A DNA stretch of 64,000 bases from Octopus bimaculoides (Eukaryota): assembly GCF_001194135.2 (NCBI RefSeq), contig NC_068982.1, positions 152,063,954-152,127,953 of the forward strand. The letters are read 5' to 3'. The position numbers and the translations under genes are program-made. The notes under the pieces were generated by a model that made no database searches, was not told the origin of the DNA, and saw only the letters and a list, made by a program, of their open reading frames with translations. This document shows, one piece after another, positions 36,615 to 64,000 of this stretch (the first letter of the stretch is position 1; the number at the start of each line of letters is the position of its first letter).

Positions 36615-36646
<32 letters not shown>

Positions 36647-36829
36647 GCTCATTGTATAAATTGTTCAAATGCACTGCAACCCATTAGAAAAAAAGTTGAA
36701 AAAATGAAACATAAATCCAAGTAGGCAATGACGACAGTGTAAGCTGGAAATACATGCACAGTACACTGAATAAAATAAAAAGTCAGAAAAATGAGCTGTA
36801 AAAGAGTCATAAAGAAGAAAGTTTGCACA

Positions 36830-38630: not shown

Positions 38631-38634
38631 TTAG

Positions 38635-39534: not shown

Positions 39535-39706
39535 CGTTTAGCGTCCGTTTTCCATGCTGACATGGGTTGGATGGTTTGACTGAGGTCTGGAGAGCCAGTG
39601 GCTGCACCAGGCTTCAATCTGATCTGGCAAAGTTTCTACAGCTGGATGCCTTTCCTAATGCCAACCACTCCGAGAGTGTAGTGGGTGCTTTTTATGTGCC
39701 ACAAGC
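39535..39706 (-). mobile_element. RTE family B terminal block
   Basis: gtccgttttccatgctgacatgggttggatgg...ctacagctggatgcctttcctaatgccaaccactccgagagtgtagtgggtgc. Confidence 0.75.
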
Positions 39707-41159: not shown

Positions 41160-41930
41160 GGTGAGGTATAACCATGTGGTTAAGAAGCTTACTTCACAGC
41201 TATGTAATTTTATGTTCTCTCAATTACATGGTACCTTCAGCAAGGGGCTTTCTATATACATGTATGGGGAGGGGGATGAGGATTACTTTCCAAACCACAT
41301 GGTTTTAGGATCAGTCCCATTACATGGCACTTTGGACAAGTACAGCCCCAGCCAACTAAAGCCTTGTGAGTGCATTTGGTATTTGGAAACAAAAAGAAAC
41401 ATATCATATAATATATATGTATATATGTATGTGTGTGTGTGTGTGTTACTGTCTCTTTGCTTTGACATTATGTGATAACTGATAACTGTATGCAAGAGTT
41501 ATTGTCGTGCTAGTGGAATTCTTCATTTTCAATCTTCTGTGGAAGCATGTTTGGTCATGGGGTAATATTATCTTATTTGGAAGTAGATGAATGCTGGCAG
41601 CAAGAAAGGCATCCATCCAACTTTAGAAAGCCTGCTTCAGTGAATTTTGTTCAATCCATGTGAGCATGGAAAAGTAGACACTAAAGTGATTATGATATAT
41701 ATGTGTGTGTGTGGGTGTCTGTGATTGTCTCCCACCACCAATTGACAACTGGTGTTGGTGTGCTTAGGCCCCCATAACTAAGCAGTTCAGCAAAAGAAAC
41801 TGATAGAATAAGTATCAGGTTTTAAAAAAATAAATAAGCACTGGGGTCGATTCATTCGACTAAAAATCCTTCAAGGTGGTGTCCCAGCATGGCTGCAGTC
41901 TAACGACTGAAACAAGTAAGAGAATAAAAT
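41160..41930 (+). mobile_element. Composite SINE: family A head(s), microsatellite, RTE-tailed module, microsatellite, family A 3' module
   Basis: Heads at ~41160 and ~41280; module 41445-41695 ends aaggcatcc...gagcatggaaaagtagacactaaagtgattatga and resembles 18068-18265; family A tail 41715-41930. Confidence 0.55.
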
Positions 41931-44807: not shown

Positions 44808-45945
44808 ACATCATCATCATCATCATCATCATCATCATTATCATTATCATCATTTAATGACTGTTTCCCATACTGGCATGGATTGAAGAGCTGGCTAGCC
44901 AGAGATCTGCACCAAGCTCCAATTGTCTGTTGTGGCCTGGTTTCTATGGCTGGGTGTCCTTTCTAATGCTAACCACTTTACAAAGTGTGCTTTTGTTTTG
45001 TGACACCAGTATGGGAACCTTTTACATGGAACCCACATGGGTGCTCTTTATGTAGTACCAGCATGGGTGCTTTTCACATGGCACCGGCACAAGTGCTTTT
45101 TACATGGCACCAGCATGAGTACTTTTTATGTGGCATCAGCATGGTGTGTTTTACCTAATGCCAGCATGAATGCTTTATACGTGGTACCAGCATGGATGTT
45201 TTATATGTGGCACCAGTACAGGTGCTTCTTACATGACACCAGTATGGGTGCTTTTTAGGTGGAACCAATATAGGTACTTTTTATGTGGTACCAGTACCTA
45301 TGAGGTCACCTAGAAGCTTGCAAAACAAGGACCTCATCTAAGAGAGAGGGAGTGGAACTGAGAGAAGTGGTTGTGTGCCAAGCAAGAAGTTGGATTATGA
45401 TAGAGGGATAGGGGTAGCTGTTTTACTACAGAGGAGATACTGTGCTACACCAGTAGGACATGGAAATAGGGGGAGCTGGGAGAGAAGAGACAGTCAGAGT
45501 GAGAGAGAGAGGGGAGTATAAGTAGTACAGAGAGGATAGAGGTGATGTTTCATAAGAGTGTGAGGGCAGATATTTAGAGATAGCAAGTGATGGTGAGAAG
45601 AATTGGAGTGGCTGGGAGATGGGTAAGGTAGACACATAAAGGCGTTGTGAGTGTGCAGAAAGACACATGAGGGAAAGTGGAGAGTCCTGCAGTGGATGGT
45701 GGTGGTGGTGGTAGTGGTTGGGGAGATGGTTTGTGGGGAAGTTTTGCCAGAGGACAATTATGCATGTGTGTGATTGGAAGTTGGGGCTGTAGAGGACATA
45801 CCTGTATGCATGAATGGCCATGATTTTATTTATTCTCAAGCACAGCAAATCACCAGAAGACACAGTCCCTTGTCATCTCCTCTGTGAGACTCAACATCTA
45901 AAAATCATTTTTTATCACTTCATCCCATGTCTCCCTTCTACAGAT
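44808..45945 (-). mobile_element. RTE family B 3' end with long 3' UTR containing a 26-bp tandem array
   Basis: Minus strand 45830-45935 reads TWDEVIKNDF*MLSLTEEMTRD..W*FAVLE; then a low-complexity block, ~12 units of ~gtgcttttatgtggcaccagcatgg (44995-45300), the terminal block and a (TGA)n tail. Confidence 0.75.
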
Positions 45946-46095
45946 TCCTTCTACAATTAGAAATCAGCACTTCTTTCCTCATCCATATGCCGAAAACTAT
46001 GGAAAAAGATTAACTGGCAAAATTTATAATATAAATGGTTAAGTAAAATCTACAATTTACAAATTTGATTTAGATAACAAGTAACAGATTAGAAC

Positions 46096-46602
46096 CATGC
46101 TTCACAAACTTTTTCCAACTACCACCCACTTCTATTTACAAACACTGTTTTGATGCACCCTTGTTTATGATTCAGCAAAATTTATTATGTTATTTGTACA
46201 TATATCTGTGCACACAAGTCAGCAATTCACCTAATGTTAATCATGCAGTGGCTGTTTATTACATGTATAAAAATACACAGAAATTATGAGTCTTTTAAAT
46301 AATACTTTTGCGTATTGTTAAAAATTTACATGCACAGGTGGCATATGTTTGGTTTTGTTTATTTACTTATTCACATTTTGATGTCTAATGTTATTGTTGC
46401 TATTGTTATTGTCATGGATGTGACTGTTAAGCAACTTATTATTATATTTATGTTATTTAAAGTTAATATTTAAACTGAAGACAAACACAGAAAACAATGT
46501 GCAGATGCATCTATTGCCCCTATCACTACTTTTATTCCTGGTACCTATATAAGATTTTTAGAAATCCTCAGGGGCAATATCACCAAATTTGGGAAACACT
46601 AC
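46096..46602. mobile_element. Possible hAT-type non-autonomous element
   Basis: Degenerate TIRs catgcttcacaaacttt / aaatttgggaaacactac and imperfect 8-bp flanks attagaac / gttagaat. Confidence 0.45.
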
Positions 46603-48847
46603 GTTAGAATATTTAGCTAAATGCAAACCATATATCATACTTAAAGGTTATGGGGACAATTTTGCTATGGCTCAAAATACTGATTAATCAACCCTCAAAA
46701 ATATAAGATTGAATTTATCAGTGAAAAGATGTCAAATAATATTAATATTAATTGGGAACTAATATCAAATAATATTGATATTAATTGGAAACAGCAATGG
46801 AACAACGACAATACTGCCATTTTATGATTGAAAAGTACAAGCAATAAAAGTAAGTTTAAATTTATTCAATTCAGTATTGCTGGATTTTGCCCCTGTACTT
46901 TGGAATCATTAGGTACAAGTGCTTTAGAATTTGTTGAGACATAGTATTAGAGACAATTATGATATAAATGTCGTTCTATATACCAAGAATGGTATATACA
47001 ATTTTAGGTAGATCATAACTATATCTATCATGATTTTTTTTTTACATAAAGTGAAATGATGGTGAGAACTGAATAAATTGCATTCAGTGGCATTAAGAAA
47101 CTCAGAGTTCTAAATATAAGTGTTTTATGCTTGTGTCATTTATTAAATATAGTCTTTGTTATATGTTCATATATATGTGTATATGTATGTATGCATATAT
47201 ATGAATATATCTCTATGATTAGTACTATTTTGTTATGCACATTCATAAAGCTGGAAGAAAATGGTGTTAAGCAATTTATCCAGTGTGCTGATGCTTCTAC
47301 CAGTTCACTGCCTTTGAATGTAAAGAAATAATAATAGTAACAATGATAATCTCAGCAACAATATATACCTTATAATAAAGTGAGTATAAGTTTTAAAAGT
47401 ATTAAAACCAGGATATCTTACATATTTCTCTTTGTTTAGAGTTTAAACCCTGAATAATTTGTACATCACCCCTCTCATGAGAACTTGCGGATAGACCATA
47501 AAGATACACACACACACACATATACATATGAATTGTAAGTGCTTGTATGCGTGTGTGTATGAGTGTGTGTAAGTGCATTTGTATATATGGGGAACAGCAG
47601 ATTTTCTTTCAGGCATGGTGTACTGAAAACTCAGCTGGGTCTTATTTTTTGTCCTTGCAGTTTATATGGACTGGTAAGGATCCCAAATGAGTTATCATTT
47701 CTAAACTTTCATGGTCTCAGCTTCATGGTGAAGTGATAGTAGCATATGTCTTATTTTCCTTAATAGCAGGCTGGAAGTGTGTGATTGATATGGATACCAT
47801 CACTAGAGTTTAGATTTCAGTTGTTAGATTTTTACATACCATCAATTAGGTGTTTATTTTAGTTTGTGACTAGTGTATATGATCTATGTGTTTATTTTAG
47901 CTTTGTACTGTATTATAGGTATTGCCTTTATCATTTATTGTCTATTTTTGAGTGGAATTTGTATAGATATGTAGACTCCAAATGGACAGTTAGTAATGGA
48001 AATAATCATTTCTTCATAATAATCGACCGGATTAGAAGTTTGAATTTTAAATTAAAGAATAAGGAACAAAATGCATAGAATATGCATATTTAATTTTACT
48101 TTTGCTTACTTATTATGAATTTGTTAAAATTCCTAGTCTTTAGTAATTACGTATAGGATTATTTAATCCTTTTAAGAAGTCATCAGCATGATATAAACCA
48201 AGGTATATAAATGAAACATCTTATGAAGTGTAACATTTCTTTTTCTCCACTAATGATATTCTAACTAGATTTTTTTTAGTTGTGTGATGTAGTGCATGGC
48301 AATTTCTCCTTGTAAATGCACAGTGAGTCAGCAGGGGGATTTAATACTTGCACAACCAATAAAACAATCAATGTCATGAAATTTACAACTTTCATGTTTG
48401 CAATCAAAATTATTAATCACATTGGTCATTAATAACATACTCGTTACAAAGGTAAACTCCGGACTGATATATAAATTTAACAATGAAAATCTATATTCTG
48501 GTAGTCTTTTCTTCTTGTTGTCTCTGGGGAAAGGAACATTAACCATGACCTTCACAGGTCCTTCAAAGGGGTAAGCTTGATGCTATTAATGTTGTTTAAA
48601 CTATTGCAGCAAATCAACACTTGTAAAAACATGAGCAGGGAGAAAATTCTAGAGAGCCAATGTCCTAGGGTAAAAGAACTGGTCATAAATGGTTAATGAG
48701 GGACCAAGTGGATTATGCAACAGGAGTGCCAGAGTGATGGAAATACGGAACCAGTTAGCTCAATGGAAATGTGTGTGTGTGCATACATGTACATGCATGT
48801 GTGTGTGTGTATGTGTGTGTGTGTATGTGTGTGTGTGTATATGTATA

Positions 48848-48895
<48 letters not shown>

Positions 48896-48904
48896 TACAC
48901 AAAC

Positions 48905-49470
48905 AGTGTAAAATTAACAGCAGAACTTGAAGTAATCCAGCAAATCTATACAAAGAAGATCATCTCAGCGTGACATGTCAGCTTCTGGAAGAGAGTGAAA
49001 AAGTTGACTCTACTCCCTAGAATAAAGGCAGGAAAGATATGCAGTGATATATATCTGGAAAATCCTAGAAGAACTTGTACCAAACTTTGACATTGAAAGC
49101 TACACAAACAGCAGAATAAGGTGTCACTGCATAGTACCAAAAATTGTAAAACTGTCCTCAGGATATAGGACCAGATATTGTAATAGCTTGGGTTTCAACG
49201 GCCCACAGCTCTTCAATATCCTTCCAAAAATCCTGAGATACCTACATGATGTGGATGCAGGTGCCTTCAAGACAAAACTGGATATCCTCCTGTCAAGAGT
49301 TCTGGATGAACTTACCTCACAGAAAAATATCCAGCTGAGAGTAACAACATCAAACTCCCTCATCCACCAAATGCCACATATCAGAGGAGGTTTTGAAGTA
49401 GCAAAAGCATAGCAAAGTTAATGGTGGTGCCCCAGCATGGCTGCAGCTCTTGAGCTGAAACTAGCAAAAA
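48905..49470 (+). mobile_element. CR1/L2-group LINE 3' end with intact 3' tail
   Basis: AELEVIQQIYTKKI...LYSLE*RQERYAVIYIWKILEELVPN...GPQLFNILPK...FKTKLDILLSRVLDE...SNSLIHQM, then tail ggtggtgccccagcatggctgcagctcttgagctgaaactagcaaaaa. Confidence 0.85.
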
Positions 49471-49527
49471 TATACATACACAGATATATATATATATATA
49501 CATATATATAAACTACTTAACATTATA

Positions 49528-49800
49528 TTAGTTATAGAAAAGACAGAGAGAGGAGACAGCACCCTTGCAGGACAGAGGGTAGTGCATATCCATGAGTGAC
49601 TGAATTCCAATTAGTCGAGTAACCCTTTTGTGGATGTGATCCATGATATCTGTGTGCATAGCAGCAGTACTGCCCCAGATGTGGGAGCTGTACTTCATTG
49701 TGGCCCTCACTTGAGCCTTGGAGAGTTTTAGGAGCTTTCAAGCAACGAAATACTTTCTCACCCCGAAGAGAAGGACCAATCTTTGCAAAAGAGATCCTTA
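49528..49800 (-). mobile_element. Jockey-like RT C-terminal remnant
   Basis: LLFGVRKYF..KLSKAQVRATMKYSSHIWGS...DHIHKRVTRLIG...AVSSLCLFY. Confidence 0.75.
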
Positions 49801-50617
49801 GTAAGAGGGAGGCCCAGCATTTGGAGTCACAGTGAGGGCTCTAACTGAACATCACTCATGCTTAGTGGAGATGCTGTGCAGTAGTGTCTTTCTTAATGTG
49901 AGTAGTGCTTCAGTTTTTTTTTTTACTTTTGCTGTTGAAAGAAAATGCTCCCAAGTTCTCTGTTTCTGGAAGCAATGTAGGTTTAATATGTGATGTCTAG
50001 GCTGAGTGTAAGTAACACATTAGTGTGGCGACAGTAGTAGTTGGAGTAACAGTTGTAGACAAAGAGATAGAGAAATAGGTCACTTGGGGATGGTAGAGGC
50101 CAGTGTGCAATGAGAGATTTTATTACTGATGTTATTATTGTTGATTCTGTAAGTATTGCCAAAGTTGCTTCTTTTACTGATGCAGTTGATGTTGTTCAAG
50201 TGTCTGCATTGTTAGTGTAGTTGTTTTAGTGGAAGCTGACAATATAGTTGCTTATGCCATCAAAGTTAATGTTGATGTTCATCAAGAATCAGTGTTGCTG
50301 TAGTTATTGTTGTTCTTGTCGTTGTGGTTGTCATTGAATATAGAGAATGTGGCACAGAGGTATATTAAACAAATTCCTTGTCTTTGTTTTTGTTTATTTT
50401 TCTGCTGGATCAATCAGAAGTAAAATTTGTATAAAGTATTATAAAGAGGCAAGAACACTCACCAATATCCCTTCCTTCTGAAGACAAAGCAAGGTCTAGA
50501 AATCTTGATTATTATTTAAGGGCTACATTATTATTTGGGAGTTAAACTGAAGAACCCATATAAAAATATTGAAAACTTTGATTAAAAAAAAGATAAAACT
50601 AGAACACTATAATGTAT

Positions 50618-50677
<60 letters not shown>

Positions 50678-50684
50678 TAGTAAT

Positions 50685-50781
50685 GCCCCAGCTTGGCCCC
50701 AGCTTGGCCCCAGCTTGGCCCCAGCTTGACCCCAGCTTGGCCCCAGCTTGGCCCCAGCTTGGCCCCAGCTTGGCCCCAGCA
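50685..50781 (+). repeat. 11-bp minisatellite (gccccagcttg)x8 inside a SINE/LINE tail remnant
   Basis: Eight units with one variant (accccagcttg), then gccccagcatagcc...cagtcatatgactgaaaa. Confidence 0.95.
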
Positions 50782-50827
50782 TAGCCTTGACTTGGCTACA
50801 GTCATATGACTGAAAATGGTATACATA

Positions 50828-51018
50828 CAAGGGGGTGCTGAAAAGTTACAGGCTTTGGATAAAAGAAAATATAGGAGTATCAATTAATTACAATTTTATT
50901 CAACATATTCCCCTCTCAGATTCACAGACTTATTGCAGTGGTCCTTCAGTTTTTCTAAGCCCTGTAAAAGAACTCAGAAAGTTGGCCCTCTGACCAGGAA
51001 CTTTTCAGCACCCCCTTG
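50828..51018. mobile_element. 191-bp Tc1/mariner-type MITE
   Basis: Perfect 20-bp TIRs caagggggtgctgaaaagtt / aacttttcagcacccccttg with TA on both sides. Confidence 0.9.
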
Positions 51019-51449
51019 TATACACACACATGTGCACACACACACACACATACACACACACATAGTGTTTTGAAGTCAATTTATGAGAGCAAGGCATTTT
51101 GTTTTTAAAGGAAGATGCTTATTGCCAGAGCTATTTTGCAGTAAAGGTGCTTAAGTTGAGGTGAGCTTCATCTCAGTTCTTTCTTTAACCACTTCGCATA
51201 TATCTGACAGAAGGCTTTTTATGAGCTTTTTCGTAGCATTGAAACAGATCTCGGTTTAGATGTAGAGTTAAAATAAAATGAGAGGAGTGCTTACGTCTTC
51301 TCAGATAGCTTACTGGTGGTGTAATGCTGTTTATGTCATTGGTGTTGTTAATTTTAGCCATGATCATGTTAGAAAAATTCCACATAGTATCAGTTATATT
51401 TTTTAAAAATCTGGTGTGAATGATGCTATGTTGCTAAGTAAAAGGTGTT

Positions 51450-51810
51450 TCGCTTATTTACATTGGAGAAATAAACCAGTTGGTTTATAAACCAGGAGGA
51501 GTTGGCATAAATTTAGAAGAAAATGTCCAAAAAGAACTTTTAAATGGTCCTCTATGCCTGCACATCTGATGTTAATGCTACTATCTTTATATATATATTT
51601 ATGGGTGTATGTATTTGTGTGTATGTATGTATATTTGCATGCATGTATGAAACAGGCCACTTTCAGTTTTTGTCTACCAAATCCAGTCACAAGAGGTTTG
51701 ATCAATCTGGGGCTATAGAAGAAGATATTTGTCTAGTTTTTCTATACAGTGGGACTGAATCAGAAATGTATGAATGGGAAACAAACTTCTTAACCACAGA
51801 ACCATGCCTG
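51450..51810 (-). mobile_element. SINE family A copy
   Basis: tttcagtttttgtctaccaaatccagtcacaagagg...ggctatagaagaagata...gggactgaatcagaa = reverse complement of the family A head. Confidence 0.6.
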
Positions 51811-51831
51811 CACTGTATGTATGTAACTATT

Positions 51832-51887
<56 letters not shown>

Positions 51888-51927
51888 AATACATACATAC
51901 ATATATATATATGTATATATATATATA

Positions 51928-52440
51928 CATCGTCATCATCATTTAACGTCTGTTTTCCATACTGGCATGGGTTGGATGGTTCGACTGGGGTCTGGGAAGA
52001 CAGGAGGCTGCACCAGGCCCCAATCTGATCTGGCAATGTTTCTACAGCTGGATGCCCTTCCTTTCGCCAAACACTCCGAGAGTGTAGTGGATGCTTTTTA
52101 CATGCCACAAGCACAGGAGCCAGAAGAGCTGGCATTAACCACAATCAGATGGTGCTTTTTACAGCACAGAAGCCAGTCAAGGCAACACTGGCATCGGCCA
52201 CGTTCAGATGGTGCTTTGTACATGCCACCAGTATGAGGGTCACAACTACAATTTCCATTTGATTGTAATTTGATTTAATTTGCTTTGATTTTGATGTTGA
52301 TGTACTTGACTCAATAGGTCTCCTCAAGCACAGCATGTCACCCTACGTTCCAAGGTACTTTTGAGTGGGCTGGTTATGCGATGCTGGTGTAGGTTACAGC
52401 TGTGAACTCACTTTATCTGCCGGGTCTTCTCAGTCACAAC
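51928..52440 (-). mobile_element. RTE family B 3' end (last ORF2 codons + 3' UTR + TGA tail)
   Basis: Minus strand starts VTEKTRQIK* near 52440; terminal block at 51940-52110; tca repeats at 51928-51941. Confidence 0.75.
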
Positions 52441-52454
52441 ATAAGTTTATGGAA

Positions 52455-52615
52455 TCATTAGCATGCCAAGCAAAATGCTTAACAGTATTTCGTCCATCTT
52501 TATGCTGAGTTCAAATTCCACTGAGGTCATCCTTTTGGATTCGATAAAAATAAGTACCAGTTGAGTACTGGAGTCAGTGTAACTGACTTAATTCCATCCC
52601 CAAAATTTGAAACTT
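52455..52615 (+). mobile_element. SINE family B copy
   Basis: aaatgcttaacagtatttcg...gagttcaaattccactgagg...gataaaaataagtaccagttgagtactgg; includes the B-box-like gagttcaaattcc. Confidence 0.7.
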
Positions 52616-52790
52616 ATATATATATAGGTATATGCATATATATTTGTGTTTGTGTATGTGTTTATTTGTATATNNNNNNNNNNNNNNNNNNNNNNNNNNN
52701 NNNNNNNNNNNNNNNNNNNNNNNNNNNNNNNNNNNNNNNNNNNNNNNNNNNNNNNNNNNNNNNNNNNNNNNNNNNNNNNNNNNNNNGGAA

Positions 52791-52980
52791 TGGAAAAACC
52801 CTTAAAGCCACAAGGAAGCACATTTTCACATTATACTGGGAGGGGAGATAACTGCCCCTCAGCAAGCAAGATCACTATACAAGTCTAGTTTCAGTTGAAA
52901 ATTACAAGCTCATCAGTAGTAACTTACCTCCCTTATCAGTATATGAAAATGTGCTTTCTTGTGGTTCTAAGAGTTTTCCA
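52791..52980. mobile_element. ~190-bp MITE-like element with ~50-65-bp imperfect TIRs
   Basis: tggaaaaacccttaaagccacaaggaagcacattttcacattatactg vs reverse complement of cagtatatgaaaatgtgctttcttgtggttctaagagttttcca; left flank abuts an N gap. Confidence 0.7.
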
Positions 52981-54994
52981 ACTTTTATTTCTAGCACTAT
53001 AGGTGCCATCCAGCACCCTCAGTTACAATTAGTGACAAATGAATTTTTTCCTATTTGGTTTTATATTGCATATAACTGCCTATGTTATTTTATAGTTGAA
53101 AAACTTCACAGGTTACTGGGTTTCATGTAACTGACAATCTAAGAGAAGTGAACTGTTGGAATAATACGATGGTTTGTAAATACTTATAAGTGTAACAGTG
53201 ATAATTATTTAGTAACTCACCAAATAAACACTTAAAGCTGATTCGACAGAGGCATATCACTTTCAGAATTACTGGAATCTGTTGGATGATAACAACTAAC
53301 CATTAAAAAGACATAATATATGCATTAAAAATGAGTGAAAGTTATATTAAAACCTGAATAAATAATTTGCTTATACATATTGCAGTGAAGAAGGAAGCCA
53401 TCTTAGAAATAAAGAGTTTATGAAAAATATTTTGCAAATTATTTTGTTAAAATAAAAATGGTGAATGAGTATCAGTGGAGTTTGTGGAATGTTCATGGCA
53501 GGCAGAGAAGAAAGAGAAGAAGGAAAATGAGAAAGAAAAGGTGACAGTAAAGAGAAAAGCAAAAGAGGGAAAGAGAAAGAAAAAAGATGCTAGCTAAATA
53601 AAAAGAAACATTATTAGTCACAATCAATAGTTTGTATCTACAATTATGGATAAGAAACAAATGTATATATGTAGAGATGTACACAGGAGAGATAGGCAGG
53701 AGTAGAAAACATATATTTAGTATGGAAATTAGATTGATATATGCCTAAAGGCAAATCTCTATCACATCCTACTTGTAGGGTGTGAAGGAAATACAAATCA
53801 AACACAGATACACAGAGACAGAATAAAATTCAATCAAAATAAAACATGCAATTCATTTTTGAAATATGTAAGGAGATGGAGAAAATATATTTGAGGATAT
53901 GTAAAAAAAAATCAATCAAATCAATATAAAGTTGGAGTGATATAAGAAACAATACAATAGAATAATAATATAACATTACATATAAAGGGTCATTGAAAGA
54001 TCTAAAAGGTAAAAGGAGAAAAAAATGAATAAAGATCGAATGCGATGGTTGGAAGGAAACAATGCGAGTGCAAAAGTGGAAAAATATGTCCAACATATTC
54101 AAAGTAATAACAAAAGAACTGAAAAAAAAAACATATGTAATAATGGGGGATGGTTTTATACATTAATCATTTGATAATAAAGGTCATGAAATCAAAAATG
54201 TCAAAGAATGCCCACAATAGTTCAATAGTCCATATTTTCAATTCAAGACGGAATTATCCTGAAACAATATAAAATATTTCTTGCTTAAGCATAGCAGATA
54301 TTTCATAAAGTGGTGGTAGGATTTATGCCTGTATGGGCTTGCTCTTTCCAAGATGGATTGCAATTATTATGCTTGTTACCATATGTAAATGTGAATTATT
54401 TAATCTGGTTTTAATTTTGACTGACTAATTTCTAATGATTAAATTATTTTTCATCAGCAGTCAGTCGTTTTCATCCTACCATTTCTAGCAATTTTGAAGA
54501 ATGATAACCCCACCCTCTGTCCAATCAGCTTTAAATGTTTATCTCATAAATTACTAAATAATTATTACTGCTCCATTTATAAATATTTATAAATCACTAC
54601 ATTATTCTAACAATTCACTTTAATTTGATCATCAATTACATGAAATTCTGGGCAACAGTTTGTGAAATTTTTCACCTTCAATAAAAACACTTTATTTTAC
54701 TCTACCTTTGACATCTGAGTGCTATTTTCTCCACCATTTTTCACACTTGTGTGCCAACATGTCTGTGTGCGTATATAAACACACACACACATAATTATAT
54801 ACATATAATATACACACCACACATACACATACACACACACACTCACATATGTAAGGAGTGTATAAAGTTATAAATGATTACTAGATTACTTGAATCCATA
54901 TACATTGACATGTAGTTCTGCACATGAATGTGTACATGTAAGAGATAAATATTCATAAGTATTATCATCCTCATTATTATTACTAAAGATGAAG

Positions 54995-55200
54995 AGCTGG
55001 CAGAATTGTTACCATGCCAGACAAAATTCTAAGTGAAATTTCTTCCAGCTTTACATTCTAAATTCAAATTCCACCAAAGTCAGCTTTGCCTTTCATCCTT
55101 TCAAGGTTGATAAAATACCAGTTGAGCACTGGGTTCTAAGTAATTGACTATCGCCTTTCCCCAAAATTCCAGGCCTTGTGCCTATATTAAAAATTATTAC
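54995..55200 (+). mobile_element. SINE family B, near full length
   Basis: gagctggcagaattgtta (A-box-like) ... aattcaaattccacc (B-box-like) ... ctttgcctttcatcctttcaaggttgataaaataccagttgagcactggg ... ccaggccttgtgcc. Confidence 0.75.
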
Positions 55201-56344
55201 ATAAAATTACCATGAAAAACTATTCTTAATTTAGAATCATTTAGTTGTATAATAAATTTTGGAATGATTTTCAGTTATTTACTCCATGTCATATCAAGTA
55301 GCACTTATTTACTAGTAGCAGTTACTTACTCTATGTCATATCAAGTAGAATGTAATAAACATCCCTCCTTCTTGTTATGTAAACATTTACCTCTTAGATC
55401 ATTATTTGTTCTTCATTTGATCTATACTATACATAGTTCCATAATTGTCATCCAACATTTTTTATAATTGTAATTCTCATCAGATGAGAGCTAGCCATTT
55501 ATTTCATAAACATTGCTAGTCTAATCAATTTAGCTCAACATGCTAACCATGCAAATGGCCTTGTGGTTATGATGTGGGCTCATACTTTGATCACAAGACT
55601 GTGATCATTGTGTCTTTGATTAAGTTACTTCATTTCACATTGCTTTGGTCTAGTCACTGAAAAATCAGTGCCAGCAGCTACTAGGAATTTACTCTATGAC
55701 AATGAAATTCTAATCAGGGAGCAGTTTGTACTATCAGTTGCTTAAATGCCTTAAAAACTGGGGTAAACTCCAGCCTAATGAGCTGGTGGGCTTGAAACAA
55801 TCAATTTTTATATTATTTATTCTCTTAATATAGCTTATATTTATATCTATATATCTTATATATTTATATCTATATATCTTATATTTATATCTAATATATC
55901 TTAATATTTTCATGGATAGGTTACATAAGTTATTCACTATTGTTTAACTATAACACACTGTTAGTCTTTGTTTTTATTTCTTTTGCTAAATATTTAATTT
56001 CATCATTTGTTGCTTGATATTTCTCTTTGCATGATCATGTCAATATCAATGCTTTCACTGCTATAATCCCTTGCAGCAGCTTACTGCATCAGTTGCTCAC
56101 TTTATCTGTAGCTTAATTCATCTGTGCTCTTACTATCATTATGTTTCCCTCAAGCTTATATCATCTGTTCACATATTGCTCGACAATTTACATTACACCA
56201 CTCACCACTTGATATTATATTCCCTTTTCAGTTTGCATCTTGCACTTTGATTTATTTTTTCCTTATTTGAGAATATTTTATTAGTCATACAATGCATAAT
56301 AAAATTTATTTAATAATACATACATCACCACCACCACTACCACC

Positions 56345-57025
56345 ATTATCATCATCATCATCATTATCCTTGTAATAAACAGTTCCATCATCTTTGTTTT
56401 GTATCTGAGTTCTCAGTATCTGCATAGGTTGGCTGGGTTATTTAGTACAGCATCTTGCTACCTGATGCATCTCTTCATTATGCTCTTTGAGGTTCAGCCT
56501 TTTGAGATCAGCTCTTACTACTTCTTCCCATGTCTTCTTTGATCTTCCACTTATGCAGATTCCTTCCACTTGGATTACTTAGCACTTTTTTACCCAACTG
56601 CCATCCTCTATACATATCACATGTCTGTACCAATATGGTCTTTTCTCTTGTATACCACATTTAATTCTTCATATACCACTTTTCTCTCAGTTCATTTGGG
56701 CTCGGTCATTCATGCATACTAGCATTACACATCTATCAAACATGACTGCCATTAAATTTCATGCCTTCATATATCTTCCTCATTCAATGCCATGTTTTGC
56801 TACCATGCAACATTGCATTTTGCACGCAGGTATCCTACAATCACCTTTCAATAGAGAGAGAGACCTTCTTTGTTTCCTCCAAAGCTTTTAGTGCTCTGAA
56901 CTTTTTCCACCATGTTCTTCCTCAGAGTACTATGTTTTCAAAATATACCCCTTCACTGATAATTGAGTCACTTGAATAACAAAAACTATCAGCATCTACA
57001 AGGAAACCTTCAGAACATTTGAAAG
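56345..57025 (-). mobile_element. RTE family B ORF2 C-terminal remnant
   Basis: [15 protein letters not shown]...WWKKFRAL...DTCVQNAMLHGSKTW...MCNASMH...ELREK, a decayed version of the RTE segment VVDSFCYLGD...MLHGSETW; ends in a TGA tail at ~56345. Confidence 0.75.
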
Positions 57026-58560
57026 ATGTATGTATGTATGTATGTATGTATGTATGTATGTATGTATGTATGTATGTATGTATGTATGAATGAATGTATG
57101 TATGAATGAATGTATGTACATATGTATGTATGTATGTATGTATGCCTGTATGTATGTCTGTATGCATGTGTGTATGCATGTATGTGCATGACTCTGTGAG
57201 TGTATGTATATATGCATGCATTCATGCATACATCCCTAACACATCAACTTTTAATGGCGCTTAAGAAATCTCTCATTTGATTATACTTTTTTCATTATGG
57301 TTTATCTCACCATTCATTTGTTTATATTTGTTCTACATTACCACCATCTTACCTTCTTTTTAACACATTATGTAAACCACATTAGTTCTGTATTTTCTGC
57401 CTGTCTTTTATTTTTTCCCAAATGATGCTTCATTTGATTGTGATTGTTGTGTGCCATTTATATCCCATGTTTCCTTCCCAATACACAAACGGTCCAAACC
57501 CTTGTGATATATCCCCATAATTGTATGTATATGTTGTTAAATGTTTCTTCTCTCCCTCTATGTATTGATGTAGCTGTCATGTGATAAATGAACATTTAGA
57601 TCATAAAATTCTTTATAATCCTTCTTTTCTTCTAATTGAAAATAAACTACAGTTCATAAAAGAATTTAATTTTCTTGATCTGATTACAATAATAGAGCAT
57701 CACTGTGGTTTTGTTTATTGTTGTTTTTCAGCCAGTGTTTATTAAATGATATTTTCATTTAACTTTCACTTANNNNNNNNNNNNNNNNNNNNNNNNNNNN
57801 NNNNNNNNNNNNNNNNNNNNNNNNNNNNNNNNNNNNNNNNNNNNNNNNNNNNNNNNNNNNNNNNNNNNNNNNNNNNNNNNNNNNNNNNNNNNNNNNNNNN
57901 NNNNNNNNNNNNNNNNNNNNNNNNNNNNNNNNNNNNNNNNNNNNNNNNNNNNNNNNNNNNNNNNNNNNNNNNNNNNNNNNNNNNNNNNNNNNNNNNNNNN
58001 NNNNNNNNNNNNNNNNNNNNNNNNNNNNNNNNNNNNNNNNNNNNNNNNNNNNNNNNNNNNNNNNNNNNNNNNNNNNNNNNNNNNNNNNNNNNNNNNNNNN
58101 NNNNNNNNNNNNNNNNNNNNNNNNNNNNNNNNNNNNNNNNNNNNNNNNNNNNNNNNNNNNNNNNNNNNNNNNNNNNNNNNNNNNNNNNNNNNNNNNNNNN
58201 NNNNNNNNNNNNNNNNNNNNNNNNNNNNNNNNNNNNNNNNNNNNNNNNNNNNNNNNNNNNNNNNNNNNNNNNNNNNNNNNNNNNNNNNNNNNNNNNNNNN
58301 NNNNNNNNNNNNNNNNNNNNNNNNNNNNNNNNNNNNNNNNNNNNNNNNNNNNNNNNNNNNNNNNNNNNNNNNNNNNNNNNNNNNNNNNNNNNNNNNNNNN
58401 NNNNNNNNNNNNNNNNNNNNNNNNNNNNNNNNNNNNNNNNNNNNNNNNNNNNNNNNNNNNNNNNNNNNNNNNNNNNNNNNNNNNNNNNNNNNNNNNNNNN
58501 NNNNNNNNNNNNNNNNNNNNNNNNNNNNNNNNNNNNNNNNNNNNNNNNNNNNNNNNNNNN

Positions 58561-58604
<44 letters not shown>

Positions 58605-58952
58605 CATATGTGAGTATATATATGTATGTATGTATGTATGTTTGAAAATTTTATTTCCAAGATTTCATTATTAAAATTTTGTCACTGCTTTGTCACTTGC
58701 TTTGTCACCAAATGACTGCTTGTATCTGCGGGACTGGTTGTCTCGTCTCACAGGTCCTATTAAGACTTAAACTCAATAATCCTACCAAATTTACAAATAT
58801 AGTTTCTATAGAGATTATTCTACATTTTACATCCTAAGTTTGAATTCTATTTGTAACACGCAGATCGGTGCCCGTTGGTGACAGGCCTACTAAGTCCCTG
58901 AAATGGACCTATTTCTGACATTCCAGTCTCCGCATCTTTGTTTGCATTGCAG

Positions 58953-59018
58953 ATGCTGAGGACGACAGCCGTGTGGAAGATGGAGGGTCAAACAACACCT
59001 ACGTACAGTGTGTATTAT
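58953..59018 (+). CDS. Candidate 66-nt cassette exon of the HCN gene (S4-S5 linker)
   Basis: Branch-point-like ttctgac at 58913-58919, pyrimidine tract, ttgcag acceptor, consensus gtgagt donor at 59019. Phase 0 frame (compatible with the S4 exon end) is open: MLRTTAVWKMEGQTTPTYSVYY. GC-rich, non-repetitive island. No transcript evidence available. Confidence 0.6.
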
Positions 59019-59074
59019 GTGAGTTAAGACAGCTGTCACCACTGGGCTGACATCCAGTGACACTACTCCTACTT

Positions 59075-59166
59075 CTACTGATAATAACTACCATAACTAC
59101 ATAATCATTTATTCTAATTAACATACAACCACCACCAACACCAACTCAACAACCACCGCCACTACA

Positions 59167-59198
<32 letters not shown>

Positions 59199-59300
59199 AG
59201 TAATTCTACAATCACAATAGCAACAGACATAATAATTACAATAGTTTTCTCCCATAATACAACTGTTATCATTATTATTAATGCTTCTATTATTACTACT
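59075..59300. repeat. Mixed (ACT)n/(ACC)n/(ATT)n trinucleotide microsatellite
   Basis: Directly visible. TA, TG, TATG, TCA and TAA microsatellites also occur throughout the window. Confidence 0.9.
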
Positions 59301-60512
59301 ATTATTACAATTCACTTAAGTTCTTCATTGAATGAACATGTATCTATCACACATTTCCAACATTAACAAAAATTCCCATTTACCACCAGACAAACAAAAC
59401 GTCAGTCAAACAGTCCAACAATCATATAATTCAATCAATTAATCAATCAATTAATCTATCAATCAAACAAATAGGCAGGCAGGCAGGCAGGCAGGCAGGT
59501 AGACAGAGAGAGAGAAAAAAAGAAAAAGAGTGAGAGAGAGAGACAGACTTTTTTTTTTTTGTAATTTTTGTTAATTCTTTGTCTGTCCAATAAAGAAGAT
59601 TGCTTTACCAAGCAAAAATGGAGAACCAAGGGAAGGAAGATAATTTTATGGTAGCAATGCTGATCAATGTTCTACAGAGAGAGAAGTTGACCAATCCATC
59701 CAACCATTATTCACTCACCGATCTGCGTTTTACATAAATAAGAGTTAACAGTTTTAAGATTAGTTTTCTTCCAAGCAAAACCATTCCAATAATTGAAATT
59801 CCTAATGATTAATAACTAATGAGTCCTTAATAAGAACATTAATTAAAATAGTAAAGCATTTATGAAAACAAAATTTTTTTATGAATTTAAAATGTAAAAT
59901 TATTTTGAAGTTAAATGCTAATTCAAATTATAAATAAATTTCTCTGTTATTCAGAGATGTATCAGATTTAAATAATAATCCAAAGGTACTTTATATTAGT
60001 CTTCATTAAGTTATTGGCACACTCTTTTACTTAAGGACATAACGTTCCTGAAATTCTTAACTTATCTGTTGTATTTCATAGATTTTCTCAAAAATCTTCA
60101 AAACCATTGTTGTTAAAGTGTGAAAGAAAATTTTCTATCAATTTGATAAACACATTAGTCAAAATGTAAAAGAGGAAATTTCTCTCCTTGCAATCACTCA
60201 ATGTACCTTTTTCTATCTTTAAAACCTAACTTCCTAACATCAATAAGAAGTAATAATAAATATATAAAATAAATAAAATTTCTCCCTAACAATATTCAAA
60301 TTGAATGAATAGATTTATTGATTTATGTATATTTACCTTCTCATTTCCATGAGGACTCTTGTTATGGAATTCTTAAATCATTCTCTTTGTCTGGTTTAAT
60401 TTGTGTCAATGATTGCCAATATGCATATATATATATACATATATATATATGTGTATGTGCATGTGTGTGTGTGTGTAAGTATATATGTATGCATGTATAT
60501 ATATATATGTAA

Positions 60513-60574
<62 letters not shown>

Positions 60575-61096
60575 AAGTATATATGTATGCATGTATATTT
60601 ATATATACATACATATATGTGTGTGTGTGTGTGTGTATGTGTGTATGTTTGTGTTTGTATTCATGCAGTAACATTTACTTGTTTAAGCATTGATAAATTC
60701 AATTTTATACAAATTTGTTACATTCTAATGCAATATAAATAATAATGGTTTTGTTGGAAAGAATTCAGTTATTCAAATTCCCAAACAGGAAAAGAAAAAG
60801 TCACAATTTACAGATGTTGCAAAATACTTTAGATATTAAAGCAGATATCACTGAAAAGTATTAAGTCGGACATTAGTTCTGTCAAGCCTGACTAACAGCA
60901 GTGAAATGTAATTCTGGACTTAAAGAGCATTTCAAATATCTGCTATTAAAAAGAAAGAATAAGACACCTCTCTTGGACTGTACAATTCTTCTTCTTCTCT
61001 CTCTCTCTCTCTCCCTCTCTCTCTCTCATCAGATCTATTGGTTCTGTTGCATTCTCCTTTACCTCCTTCTCATCCTCTTCCACTTATTGTTATATT

Positions 61097-61140
<44 letters not shown>

Positions 61141-61159
61141 GATGCTATTATTATTAATG

Positions 61160-61191
<32 letters not shown>

Positions 61192-61844
61192 CCAGTTAGC
61201 TCTCCCACCTGCTCCGCCATCTTTAACATTCTTAACTGACATATAATATGTTACTTCTTCTCATACCAACCTCTAATCCATAAGGTTGATATTCTTTCAA
61301 CAAATTCACTTTAAACTCAATCCTGTCTCTTCTTATGCTTATTTTATTGTTTTGTTTATTTCATTTCACCATTTAAAGGCAAAAGAAAGAAACTGAACTG
61401 GTATTATTCTTTTCTTTAGTCCAATATATTTTTAGATAACCAAAGACTTGTTTGTATATGAAAGAAAATCGATGGGTTTTAAAGTAAAATAGAAATATAC
61501 ACATTGATAAAAAAATCTACCCAAAACACCACTGCTATTCCTTTACTCTCAAAGGAAATAATATATAAATTTTCAACGCGGAAGAGAATATGCATTTTCC
61601 TGACATACTATGAAATTACTAAATATATATATCTGAAACATCAAAAGAAAAAAAAGGAATGGTTTTAATTGATATTGATAGATCTGTTAAAAAATTTTGG
61701 ATCCAGTATACAGCACATAAAAAATTTTACTGTTTTTTTTTTTTTTGTATGATGCTCAACTTTTTTCTTTTATTCATTTACATGCGTTTTCTTTTGCTCC
61801 CCATATGTGTGTGTGTGTGTGTCTTGGATGGGTATGCATGTGTA

Positions 61845-61895
<51 letters not shown>

Positions 61896-61947
61896 TTATG
61901 AATTTGTTTTGCAAGATTCCTGATGTGAAATTGTGTGTTGAAACAGA

Positions 61948-62322
61948 TATTGTTATATTTTGGGATGATCATTTTCTTTTCTTTTTTTTTTTCCAAATAA
62001 ACACATGCACTATATATTCATTCTTCACTTGTTTATTATTGTTGTTATTTTACCATAGATCCATTGCCTGTAAATCTTTTGTCACACATCTGTGACCTCT
62101 TCAGCAACCCTTTCCATCCATATGTATCCTCCAGAATGGGCTAGATGGAGGAAAAGTATACATGCGGATGGAAAAGGTCACTGAAGAGGTCACAGATGTG
62201 TGATGAAAGATTTCCAGACAATGGACATAAGATAGAATAAGAACAATAATGAGTGAAGAACAAATATATAATGTGTATGTTTATTTGGCAAAAAAAGGAA
62301 AATAACCATCCTGAAATATAAT

Positions 62323-62326
<4 letters not shown>
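61948..62326. repeat. ~380-bp imperfect fold-back palindrome (~180-bp arms, 12-nt loop)
   Basis: Core tcacacatctgtgacctcttcag / ctgaagaggtcacagatgtgtga is perfect; homology extends outward through tccattg, cttcact, ccaaataaaca and tatattt; loop 62134-62145. Confidence 0.9.
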
Positions 62327-62384
<58 letters not shown>

Positions 62385-62411
62385 AGGGAGGGAGAGAGAG
62401 AGAGAGAGAGG

Positions 62412-62845
62412 GGTGGTAAGAAACTTGCTTTCCAATTAAATGGTTCTGGGTTCAGTCGCACTTAAACAAGTATCTTCTACTATAGCCTCAGGCCAACGAA
62501 AGCCTTGTGAGCGGATTTGGTAGACAGAAACTGGAAGAAGCTCATTGTATGTGTATATATACACACACCACACACACACTTATATATATGTATATATCTC
62601 TGTATGTTTGTGCATGTGTGTGTGTGTGTCTTTGTGTCTGTGTTTGCCCATCCCCTCACCATTTGACAACCGGTGTTGGTGTGTTTGTGTCCCCATAACT
62701 TAGTGATTCAGCAAAAGAGATCAATAGAATAATTACCAAGGTTAAAAAAAAATGTACTTGGGTTGAGTTATTAGACTAAAAATTCAGGGTACTGACTCAG
62801 CATGACCACAGTCTTATGACTGAAACAAGTAAAGGTTGAAAATAA
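62412..62845 (+). mobile_element. SINE family A, full structure
   Basis: Head ggtggtaagaaacttgctttcc...gggttcagtcgcac...ttggtagacagaaactgg, microsatellite, 3' module ending cagcatgaccacagtcttatgactgaaacaagtaaa. Confidence 0.8.
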
Positions 62846-63064
62846 GATATTATTATATACATATCCATAAACATATATACTTGTGTATAAGTATGTATAT
62901 ATTCATATATATACACATATGCATACATACTCATATAATATGAATGCATATATATGTGTATATACACACGCACACCTTTAATTCATATATGCATACTCAT
63001 ATGTATGCATGCATAATGCTTGACCATGAAGGGCTCTGCTTCATCAACCTTCTTTCCCCACACA

Positions 63065-63342
63065 CACATTTTATCCCCTAACACCTCAAAAGCACTGGTG
63101 ACGGTACCACAAAAAAACCCAAAGAAACACTGGTGATAGTGTCATGTAAAAAGCTCTGGTGCTACTGCAAATAAAAAGCACTTTGTATCTTATGTAAAAT
63201 GGTTGGTGTTAGAAAGGGCACCCTGCTTTAGAAACTGAACCAAAACTGACTATAGAACCTGATGCAGCTCCTAGCTTTGCCAGCTCCTGTCAAACAGTCC
63301 AGCCCATGCCAGCATGGAAAACAGATGTTATATGATGATGAT
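63065..63342 (+). mobile_element. RTE family B 3' UTR fragment with decayed tandem units
   Basis: aaaagcactggtg.. units, ttggtgttagaaagggcacc, cagcccatgccagcatggaaaacagatgttatatgatgatg. Confidence 0.65.
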
Positions 63343-63347
63343 TTTTG

Positions 63348-63384
<37 letters not shown>

Positions 63385-63664
63385 ATACACACACGTGTGT
63401 GTATGTGTGTATACATGCATATGTTTGATGCTGGTTTGACACAGGCAGAGAATGCAATTAAGTGAGAAACTACTTAATTATGTTAGGTAGAGTGAAATAA
63501 TATTATTTATTCAAACATGAGTCTGTGTGAGTTGCTTACCTTCGGGCATATCAGAGGAACAGGAATAAAAAATTGATTAGCAACTCATGCTGACACACTT
63601 TTGAATAAATATTATATACATAATTATATGTATCTCTCTCTCTCTCTCTAAATATATATATATA

Positions 63665-64000
63665 TCATCATCATCATCGTTTAACGTCCGCTTTCCATGC
63701 TAGCATGGGTTGGACGATTTGATTGAGGACTGGTGAAACCGGATGGCAACACCAGGCTCCAATCTAATTTGGCAGAATTTCTACAGCTGGATGCCCTTCC
63801 TAACGCCAACCACTCAGAGAGTGTAGTGGGTGCTTTTACGTGTCACCCGCACGAAAACGGCCACGCTCGAAATGGTGTCTTTTATGTGCCACCCGCACAA
63901 CAGCCAGTCCAGGGGCACTGGCAACGATCTCGCTCGAAAACCCTACAAAGGCCAGTCAGGCGGTACTGGCAACAGTCACGCTCAAGATGGTACATCTTAT
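63665..64000 (-). mobile_element. Young-looking RTE family B 3' end, running off the window
   Basis: tcatcatcatcatcgtttaacgtccgctttccatgctagcatgggttggacg...; CpGs largely intact; closely matches 3628-3917. Confidence 0.8.

What the first reader, a model, noticed from the sequence alone, without database searches (positions are those of the whole stretch)
58953..59018. Candidate alternative exon inserting 22 aa into the HCN S4-S5 linker
Seen: branch point, pyrimidine tract, AG, 66 nt and GTGAGT inside a GC-rich unique island 34 kb after the S4 exon. In phase 0 it extends QWEE with MLRTTAVWKMEGQTTPTYSVYY; a phase 1 reading (DAEDDSRVEDGGSNNTYVQCVL) is also stop-free. Known: the S4-S5 linker couples voltage sensing to gating in HCN channels, and arthropod Ih genes are alternatively spliced at this position. 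Inference: a cephalopod/mollusc cassette that tunes Ih gating. I do not recognise the peptide.
Basis: partly seen in the sequence, partly recalled or inferred. Interest (0 to 1): 0.7.

Follow-up and report, generated by a model that had tools for sequence, protein, structure and literature searches.

The report
Annotated small exon of octopus HCN
The 66-base candidate is already a coding exon in a public predicted gene model of the Octopus bimaculoides pacemaker (HCN) channel, adding 22 residues where voltage sensor meets pore; whether it is transcribed or optional could not be checked here.

Summary
It lies 34.4 kb after the only HCN exon in the window, the S4 exon at 24431-24528, which ends ...RYVQQWEE in phase 0.

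The phase-0 peptide MLRTTAVWKMEGQTTPTYSVYY occurs, 100% identical and at exactly this junction, in the RefSeq prediction XP_014777507.1 (Octopus bimaculoides HCN, 1270 aa). That model reads ...QWEE|MLRTTAVWKMEGQTTPTYSVYY|LANICQDKNNGNTRRKK|FLALAGKF.... So the exon and its frame are already annotated.

Not shown:
- That the model rests on RNA rather than on the same splice signals. By a crude scoring, about one equally good pseudo-exon is expected per strand per 64 kb.
- That the exon is optional.
- That it is conserved. The squid cDNA has no insert, no relative of the peptide was found, and orthologous octopod introns were out of reach.

The context is favourable. The QWEE| junction carries inserts in many protostome HCN/Ih isoforms: insects, crustaceans, oysters, mussels and another mollusc. 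The second octopus insert is conserved as a canonical exon in cuttlefish.

I put the chance of a real, probably optional, coding exon at about 0.6. It is not novel as an annotation. Interest is modest.

The parts
24431..24528 (+). HCN S4 exon (98 nt). It encodes (G)[32 protein letters not shown]. The first codon is split (1 base from the previous exon plus GC) and the exon ends in phase 0. It is the only other HCN exon in the window.
   Evidence: tblastn, sequence, translation; residues 567-599 of XP_014777507.1 (P0357); no S1, S3, S5 or pore exon in the window; acceptor score 13.8, donor score 4.9.
24529..58952 (+). Intron between the S4 exon and the candidate exon (34,424 nt). Donor GTTTGT. 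It holds transposon-like fragments, microsatellites and three N gaps (25619-26102, 52674-52786, 57773-58560).
   Evidence: The donor directly after QWEE is shared by more than 100 invertebrate S4 loci, which read 'QWEE V..' through the GT.
58914..58952 (+). 3' splice region of the candidate exon: branch-point-like tctgAc (A at 58918), a pyrimidine-rich tract, and AG at 58951-58952.
   Evidence: Acceptor score 8.8.
58953..59018 (+). The candidate: a 66-nt exon, phase 0-0, encoding MLRTTAVWKMEGQTTPTYSVYY. It equals residues 600-621 of the RefSeq model XP_014777507.1, inserted between ...QWEE (end of S4) and the rest of the S4-S5 linker.
   Evidence: GC is 0.48, like the S4 exon at 0.50.
59019..59024 (+). 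5' splice site GTGAGT of the candidate exon.
   Evidence: Donor score 6.6, higher than that of the S4 exon.
59025..64000 (+). Start of the next intron. The following exon of the model (LANICQDKNNGNTRRKK) and the S5 exon (FLALAGKF...) lie beyond the window end.
   Evidence: no match to LANICQDKNNGNTRRKK in the window. (no S5 exon).
58821..59100 (.). GC-rich island (about 0.50) around the exon. Of the 11 such islands in the window it is the only one that has no other copy in the window and also looks unlike a transposon by eye.
   Evidence: No Rfam or tRNA match. No unusual RNA structure, z = 0.19.

Best explanation
The 66 nt are a real small coding exon of the single HCN (Ih) channel gene of Octopus bimaculoides. 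It is spliced in phase 0 after the S4 exon and before a second small exon (51 nt, LANICQDKNNGNTRRKK) and the S5 exon.

Both small exons are multiples of three and begin and end in phase 0. Any combination therefore keeps the frame, giving connections between ...QWEE and FLALAGKF... that are 0, 17, 22 or 39 residues longer. Most likely the exon is optional (a cassette).

Inclusion places a 22-residue, Thr/Ser/Tyr-rich cytoplasmic loop at the lower end of S4. This is the boundary where voltage-sensor movement is passed to the pore and C-linker. It is expected to shift the voltage dependence or kinetics of Ih, or to add phosphorylation sites.

Shown: the sequence features, and identity with a public gene model.
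Inferred: transcription, optional use and any effect on gating.
For: - XP_014777507.1 (P0357) reads ...[64 protein letters not shown].... Its residues 567-599 and 600-621 map with 100% identity onto window 24431-24528 and 58953-59018.
- The splice-site scores (8.8 acceptor, 6.6 donor) lie within the range of the other cephalopod HCN exons scored: S4 13.8/4.9, cuttlefish second cassette 4.8/5.8, cuttlefish S5 11.2/9.9.
- It is the only pseudo-exon of that quality in the 39.5 kb of this intron region held by the window.
- It sits in the only GC-rich island of the window that is neither repeated nor transposon-like.
- The junction is a proven site of insertion. Oysters carry LLKSKK and/or F[DE]A.PC...GRR[RK][RK]PG. 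Mussels carry FEACPCLTKCGRRRRPG. Sinanodonta carries an 18-aa insert. RefSeq XP_0605948xx isoforms carry a 21-aa extension. Insects and crustaceans carry 3- to 87-aa inserts.
- The neighbouring octopus insert is conserved in cuttlefish as a canonical exon: L003 8617-8673, LANICQKNNSNSNNQRKKK, ag|...|gtaaga.
- Elsewhere the model agrees with bivalve and squid proteins, for example ...SDSVKF...RRVPSLKLKR...MPCLP.
Against: - A Gnomon model is a prediction.
- By my crude matrix, about one equally good pseudo-exon per strand per 64 kb is expected by chance.
- The cloned squid HCN cDNA (ALT57286.1) goes QWEE|FLALAGKF with no insert.
- The peptide has no significant similarity to any insert at this junction (shuffle p > 0.05).
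- Nothing matched it among 1.84 billion cluster representatives, in JGI metagenome contigs, or in the 10 kb upstream of the cuttlefish S5 exon.
- Unlike most known inserts here, it is not basic.
- XP_014777507.1 reached me only through EukProt and MetaClust copies, so I do not know whether current RefSeq keeps the exon.
Confidence: 0.6

Rival explanations
1. It is a pseudo-exon, a chance combination of a decent acceptor, an open 66-nt frame and a strong donor inside a very long intron. A gene predictor added it to the RefSeq model without transcript support, and it is not part of any functional HCN mRNA or is included only as splicing noise.
For: Equally good pseudo-exons occur at about one per strand per window. 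Relaxing both thresholds by 3 bits gives 11 and 6. No conservation or homology of the peptide was found anywhere. The squid cDNA lacks it. Its composition is unlike the basic inserts of other species. The far N-terminus of the same model (MYNIIETDEIRR...) looks like an unsupported extension.
Against: NCBI's pipeline normally fixes introns from RNA-seq where reads exist, and octopus neural RNA-seq was available. This rests on my knowledge of the pipeline and was not checked. The neighbouring small exon of the same model is real by conservation. The element sits in the only GC-rich island of the window that is neither repeated nor transposon-like.
Confidence: 0.3
2. The island is functional but is not an HCN coding exon. 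It could be an exon of another transcript (read in phase 1 or on the other strand), an intronic regulatory element, or a decayed mobile-element fragment.
For: The phase-1 frame is also open. A 65-codon open frame covers the exon on the minus strand. The GC-rich stretch extends about 130 nt upstream and 80 nt downstream of the exon. A 788-nt N gap 390 nt upstream hides what lies next to it.
Against: All three open frames lack a Pfam match. There is no Rfam, tRNA or structural signal. The minus-strand frame found no related locus. There is no other copy in the window or in 87 kb of cuttlefish sequence. The only public model that uses it reads it in phase 0 within HCN.
Confidence: 0.07

Closest known systems
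RefSeq model XP_014777507.1 (PREDICTED potassium/sodium hyperpolarization-activated cyclic nucleotide-gated channel, Octopus bimaculoides; EukProt EP00106_P010065)
   Same: It contains exactly this exon, in phase 0, between the S4 exon and the next exon. It is 100% identical to the window over both exons.
   Different: It is a computational prediction. No isoform without the exon and no transcript evidence were visible to me.
Second cephalopod insert at the same junction: LANICQDKNNGNTRRKK (octopus model) and LANICQKNNSNSNNQRKKK (Acanthosepion pharaonis genome, L003 8617-8673)
   Same: Small, phase 0-0, a multiple of three, and inserted between QWEE and FLALAGKF. It directly follows the candidate in the octopus model.
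   Different: It is conserved between octopus and cuttlefish (p < 0.0005). It is basic and lies 1.3 kb upstream of the S5 exon. It has no sequence similarity to the candidate (p = 0.07) and is not in the window.
Bivalve HCN inserts at QWEE|FLA.AGKF in RefSeq isoforms: LLKSKK (6 aa) and F[DE]A.PC...GRR[RK][RK]PG (17 aa) in oysters (Magallana and related accessions), the 17-aa insert in Mytilus, and FLIAIPDKYADSGLRFPG in Sinanodonta
   Same: Same junction and same phase. They are present or absent in different isoforms of one gene, that is, used as cassettes.
   Different: Unrelated sequence. No copy of them in the window. They are basic and Cys-containing.
Arthropod Ih (DMIH, PIIH, AmIh-type) splice variants with inserts after QWEEVY
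   Same: Same place in the protein, with variable inserts of 3 to 87 residues across isoforms. Examples are ILQNLQKKRTERRGR...KSNLIFK, IPLYQQPERHYERRATPPQPDRTSK, and VSS in a cloned lobster 'Bs-I' variant. Alternative splicing of Drosophila and Panulirus Ih is published: Gisselmann et al. 2005, cited in PMC3344876; Ouyang et al. 2007, cited in PMC3487815.
   Different: The exon boundary is two residues later (QWEEVY|). The sequences are unrelated. I could not read those two papers, so their functional data are not cited here.
21-residue extension VSMLRGTMNMFPALRRSKFSQ in RefSeq isoforms XP_060594849/52/55 (mollusc, species name truncated in the output), with a related read-through in Logan ORF P0006
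   Same: Similar length, same junction, and it shares the motif MLR.T with the candidate.
   Different: It begins with Val-Ser read from the normal donor GTNAGY, so it is an alternative 5' splice site of the S4 exon and not a separate exon 34 kb away. The similarity is not significant (score 17, p = 0.08). The window's own read-through stops after 14 codons.

Membership tests
Coding exon of the HCN/Ih channel gene | Lies in the gene, on the coding strand, between two known exons | tested here: met
   + strand, 34.4 kb downstream of the S4 exon. The S5 exon is not yet reached at the window end.
Coding exon of the HCN/Ih channel gene | Canonical AG...GT borders, with an open frame in the phase left by the upstream exon | tested here: met
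   AG|66 nt|GTGAGT. The S4 exon ends in phase 0 and the 66 nt are open in phase 0. Scores are 8.8 and 6.6.
Coding exon of the HCN/Ih channel gene | Joined to neighbouring exons in a transcript or gene model | tested here: met
   Met at the level of a gene model only: XP_014777507.1 residues 600-621.
Coding exon of the HCN/Ih channel gene | Junction-spanning RNA reads or cDNA | not testable with these tools
   No octopus RNA-seq or cDNA was reachable. The searches that returned short ORFs found no spliced fragment with the peptide. The one cephalopod cDNA available (squid) lacks it.
Coding exon of the HCN/Ih channel gene | Conservation of frame and splice sites in related species | tested here: inconclusive
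   No match in the 10 kb upstream of the cuttlefish S5 exon, in the representative library or in metagenome contigs. Orthologous octopod introns could not be fetched. The O. vulgaris gene range of 320 kb was too long.
Cassette (optional) exon | Length a multiple of 3, so skipping keeps the frame | tested here: met
   66 nt. The next exon of the model is 51 nt (17 aa).
Cassette (optional) exon | Both inclusion and skipping isoforms in the same species | not testable with these tools
   Only one O. bimaculoides model was retrievable.
Known insert families at the QWEE junction (bivalve 6-aa and 17-aa, cephalopod LANICQ, arthropod ILQNLQKK / IPLYQQP, 21-aa VSMLRG extension) | Sequence similarity to a family member | tested here: not met
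   Local alignments with 2000 shuffles each gave p of at least 0.07 for every comparison in phase 0 and at least 0.056 in phase 1. Positive controls gave p < 0.0005.

The most novel reading that the evidence does not exclude
The exon is a young, octopod-specific cassette with no counterpart in squid, cuttlefish or bivalves. Together with the older LANICQ cassette it would let one gene make four lengths of the S4-to-S5 connection: +0, +17, +22 and +39 residues.

More broadly, the QWEE| junction would be a hot spot where insects, crustaceans, bivalves, another mollusc lineage and cephalopods each acquired unrelated inserts. That would be a natural insertion series at the voltage-sensor/pore interface of a non-domain-swapped channel.
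Probability: 0.35. Interest if true: 0.5.

Novelty: already known. Interest (0 to 1): 0.3.

Why it matters
HCN channels open on hyperpolarisation, and the short stretch after S4 is where that inverted coupling is set (Chen et al. 2001, listed in the references of PMC3487815).

If octopus neurons include or skip 22 and 17 extra residues there, this would be a simple splice-level control of pacemaker current in an animal with a single HCN gene. It would sit alongside the RNA editing for which cephalopod channels are known.

The exon itself is not a discovery, because a public model already contains it. Two results add something beyond the model:
- Its transcript support and optional use remain unverified.
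- Inserts at this junction are common across protostomes but unrelated in sequence.

Tried and rejected
1. A homology search with S4 plus candidate (55 aa) returned only ORFs under 100 aa that read through the S4 donor. I then found that the tool returns targets of roughly 0.6 to 1.75 times the query length, so that negative says nothing about full-length proteins.
2. Chimeric queries of 312 and 616 aa missed the 1270-aa octopus protein for the same reason. It surfaced only through the cluster of the cuttlefish fragment P0202.
3. tblastn with human, insect and lophotrochozoan HCN exons found no further HCN exon in the window.
4. The oyster cassettes have no copy in the window.
5. Comparing the window with cuttlefish sequence (L003, 87 kb) by blastn and tblastx found only microsatellites.
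6. Rfam, tRNA and RNA-folding checks of the island found nothing. The TA-repeat 'miRNA' matches at 58561-58646 are low-complexity artefacts.
7. Complementarity of the island to the S4 exon, as an RNA-editing guide, was not seen.
8. Metagenome scans with the minus-strand frame and with a wobble-degenerate phase-0 pattern found nothing.
9. phmmer of the 41-codon frame against 1.84 billion representatives gave 0 hits.
10. Look-ups of P0241 and P0356 found no record. The O. vulgaris gene P0355 spans 320 kb, so no DNA was returned.
11. The literature searches found no paper on cephalopod HCN splicing or on XP_014777507. Ouyang et al. 2007 is not held.
12. A Pfam scan of the transposon-like frames gave only a weak Tc3 transposase HTH match (E = 0.039).

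Full report
**What is in the sequence.**

The coordinates are exact. A pyrimidine-rich tract ends in AG at 58951-58952. It is followed by 66 nt at 58953-59018 (ATGCTG...TATTAT) and then GTGAGT at 59019-59024. A branch-point-like tctgAc lies 34 nt before the AG. Phase 0 reads MLRTTAVWKMEGQTTPTYSVYY, the phase-1 reading is also open, and the third frame stops at once.

A tblastn with an HCN core sequence found one HCN exon in the window, at 24431-24528. It encodes (G)[32 protein letters not shown] and ends in phase 0 at GAG|GTTTGT. Searches with human, insect and lophotrochozoan versions of the S1, S3, S5 and pore exons found nothing else. The candidate therefore lies 34.4 kb into an intron of at least 39.5 kb.

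The surrounding 280 nt (58821-59100) have GC of about 0.50 against 0.33 for the window, and no other copy in the window.

**Is it more than chance?**

Not on signals alone. I built a crude splice-site weight matrix from remembered metazoan consensus frequencies; it is not trained on octopus. With it the candidate scores 8.8 (acceptor) and 6.6 (donor).

Elements with both scores at least as high, a length of 30-300 that is a multiple of three, and an open phase-0 frame number two on the + strand (one is the candidate) and one on the - strand. A reader scanning 64 kb should therefore expect to meet about one such element by chance.

The scores are nonetheless in the range of the other cephalopod HCN exons scored:
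- S4 exon: 13.8 / 4.9
- cuttlefish second cassette: 4.8 / 5.8
- cuttlefish S5 exon: 11.2 / 9.9

Rfam, tRNA and folding checks of the island were empty.

**The decisive result.**

The protein search tool turned out to return only targets of about 0.6 to 1.75 times the query length. My first three searches therefore could not show a long octopus protein.

They did return a cuttlefish fragment, P0202 (HCN2, Acanthosepion pharaonis). Listing its 90% cluster gave P0357 = XP_014777507.1. This is the 1270-residue RefSeq prediction for the Octopus bimaculoides HCN channel.

Its sequence reads ...[70 protein letters not shown].... A tblastn of P0357 against the window maps residues 567-599 to 24431-24528 and residues 600-621 to 58953-59018. 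Both are identical within the exon bounds, and no other part of the protein maps to the window.

So the window is O. bimaculoides, or a sequence identical to it over these exons. The candidate is already a coding exon of a public gene model, and the phase-0 reading is the one used. The model continues with a second small insert of 17 residues, whose exon is not in the window.

**How far the model can be trusted.**

It is a Gnomon prediction, and I could not see its evidence line. This leaves two readings.

Where RNA-seq introns exist, NCBI's pipeline follows them, and octopus neural RNA-seq was available. This is my knowledge of the pipeline and was not checked here. Elsewhere the model agrees well with bivalve and squid proteins. 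Its second small insert is real by conservation. The cuttlefish genome has ttattgacAG|CTTGCAAACATTTGCCAG...AAAAAA|GTAAGA, encoding LANICQKNNSNSNNQRKKK. This lies 1.3 kb upstream of the S5 exon (L003 8617-8673), and the similarity exceeded all 2000 shuffles.

The far N-terminus of the model also looks unsupported.

I put the probability that the exon is really used at about 0.6.

**Context: the junction is an insertion hot spot.**

I extracted the stretch between R[YF][IV].Q[WF]EE and [MLV]R[IV][FCL][NK]L from all fetched proteins.
- Vertebrates have a fixed 12-residue stretch (IFHMTYDLASAV).
- The short protostome forms have 8-10 residues (FLAVAGKF, VYFLNMASVF).
- Oysters: isoforms of one gene carry LLKSKK, a 17-residue F[DE]A.PC...GRR[RK][RK]PG, both, or neither.
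- Mytilus: the 17-residue insert, or none.
- Sinanodonta: an 18-residue insert.
- RefSeq XP_0605948xx isoforms: a 21-residue VSMLRGTMNMFPALRRSKFSQ. It begins with the read-through of the normal donor, so it is an alternative 5' splice site.
- Insects and crustaceans: inserts of 3 to 87 residues, including a cloned lobster variant.

Alternative splicing of Drosophila and lobster Ih is published: Gisselmann et al. 2005, cited in PMC3344876, and Ouyang et al. 2007, cited in PMC3487815. I could not read those two papers.

The donor directly after QWEE is shared by more than 100 invertebrate loci. Two lophotrochozoan loci (L001, L002) confirm that the S5 exon starts at FLA/FLS in phase 0.

**What speaks against the exon, or limits the claim.**
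- The cloned squid cDNA (ALT57286.1, P0234) has no insert at the junction.
- The candidate peptide is not significantly similar to any insert listed above. It is not basic, unlike most of them.
- It has no match among 1.84 billion cluster representatives, in JGI metagenome contigs, or in the cuttlefish sequence I could reach.
- The proper test is the orthologous introns of other octopods, and these were out of reach. The O. vulgaris gene spans 320 kb and no DNA was returned.
- 'Alternative' therefore rests only on frame arithmetic (66 and 51 nt, all phase 0), on the squid cDNA, and on analogy.

**Mechanism, with shown and inferred steps marked.**

Shown: if spliced as in the model, 22 residues (39 with the next exon) are placed between ...RYVQQWEE and FLALAGKFMRIFNL.... 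That is at the cytoplasmic end of S4, before S5.

Inferred from established knowledge of HCN channels: this short segment takes part in coupling the voltage sensor to the gate (Chen et al. 2001, listed in PMC3487815). A longer, flexible loop there would be expected to change voltage dependence or kinetics rather than abolish function, given that many species tolerate inserts at the same place. The loop is Thr/Ser/Tyr-rich, with an RTT motif, so it may also add phosphorylation sites.

**Verdict.**

As an annotation it is already known. What remains open is whether it has transcript support and whether it is an octopod-specific cassette.

Interest is 0.3. The most novel reading not excluded is a young octopod cassette at a cross-phylum insertion hot spot. 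I give it a probability of about 0.35 and moderate interest.

Noticed in passing
L002 15.9-16.08 kb and 16.76-16.93 kb (ENA ERZ25069853 ctg33056l, unidentified invertebrate): There are two tandem S5 exons, both preceded by cag and followed by gt. They encode [50 protein letters not shown] and [50 protein letters not shown]. They look like a mutually exclusive exon pair for the S4-S5 linker plus S5.
   Followed up: partly
L003 8617-8673 (Acanthosepion pharaonis CAHIKZ030002017.1): An unannotated 57-nt exon, LANICQKNNSNSNNQRKKK, with canonical splice sites lies 1.3 kb upstream of the S5 exon. It is the counterpart of the second insert of the octopus model. The submitted cuttlefish model (CAE1279423.1) starts only inside S5.
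   Followed up: yes
P0181 (Logan, 174 member sequences), P0002, P0218: These transcripts or ORFs read through the donor after QWEE(VY) into the intron and end soon after, giving S1-S4-only proteins. In oysters the read-through peptide is similar in two species (VRFPRCIVSSATIH and VRVPQCLVLSATAI). A crustacean entry named 'splice variant ABs-I' does the same.
   Followed up: no
P0234, P0357, P0238, P0241, P0253, P0254, P0260; L001 about 2027-2065: A second variable site lies just before S4. It is an optional 10-13 residue insert ending in YWQ (TNARMDASQYWQ in squid, TRMDVSQYWQ in octopus, TRSRVDAGSYWQ in oysters). In L001 it is produced by an alternative donor of the S3 exon. It is conserved across molluscs.
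   Followed up: partly
RefSeq XP_060594849/52/55 (P0394, P0396, P0397) and Logan ORF P0006: A 21-residue extension, VSMLRGTMNMFPALRRSKFSQ, sits at the QWEE junction. It starts with the read-through of the normal donor, so it comes from an alternative 5' splice site. The window's own read-through stops after 14 codons.
   Followed up: partly
window 3641-3920, 39481-39740, 51921-52260, 63661-63980: A GC-rich repeat of about 170-300 nt is present in at least four copies at 82-87% identity, in both orientations. It is probably a short interspersed element.
   Followed up: no
window 9341-11020 (+), 14241-14698 (-), 49531-49840 (-): These are transposon-like open frames. By eye they look like an endonuclease/reverse-transcriptase-like LINE fragment, a Tc1/mariner-like transposase fragment and a LINE C-terminal fragment. 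Pfam gave only a weak Tc3 transposase HTH match (E = 0.039), so the assignments are tentative.
   Followed up: partly
window 57773-58560: A 788-nt assembly gap ends 390 nt upstream of the candidate exon, next to a (TA)n tract. Whatever flanks the island on that side is unknown.
   Followed up: no
O. vulgaris GCA_951406725.2 (P0354, P0355): The HCN gene is annotated only as N-terminal fragments (152 and 189 aa) with a gene range of about 320 kb. The channel core, including this junction, seems to be missing from that annotation.
   Followed up: no
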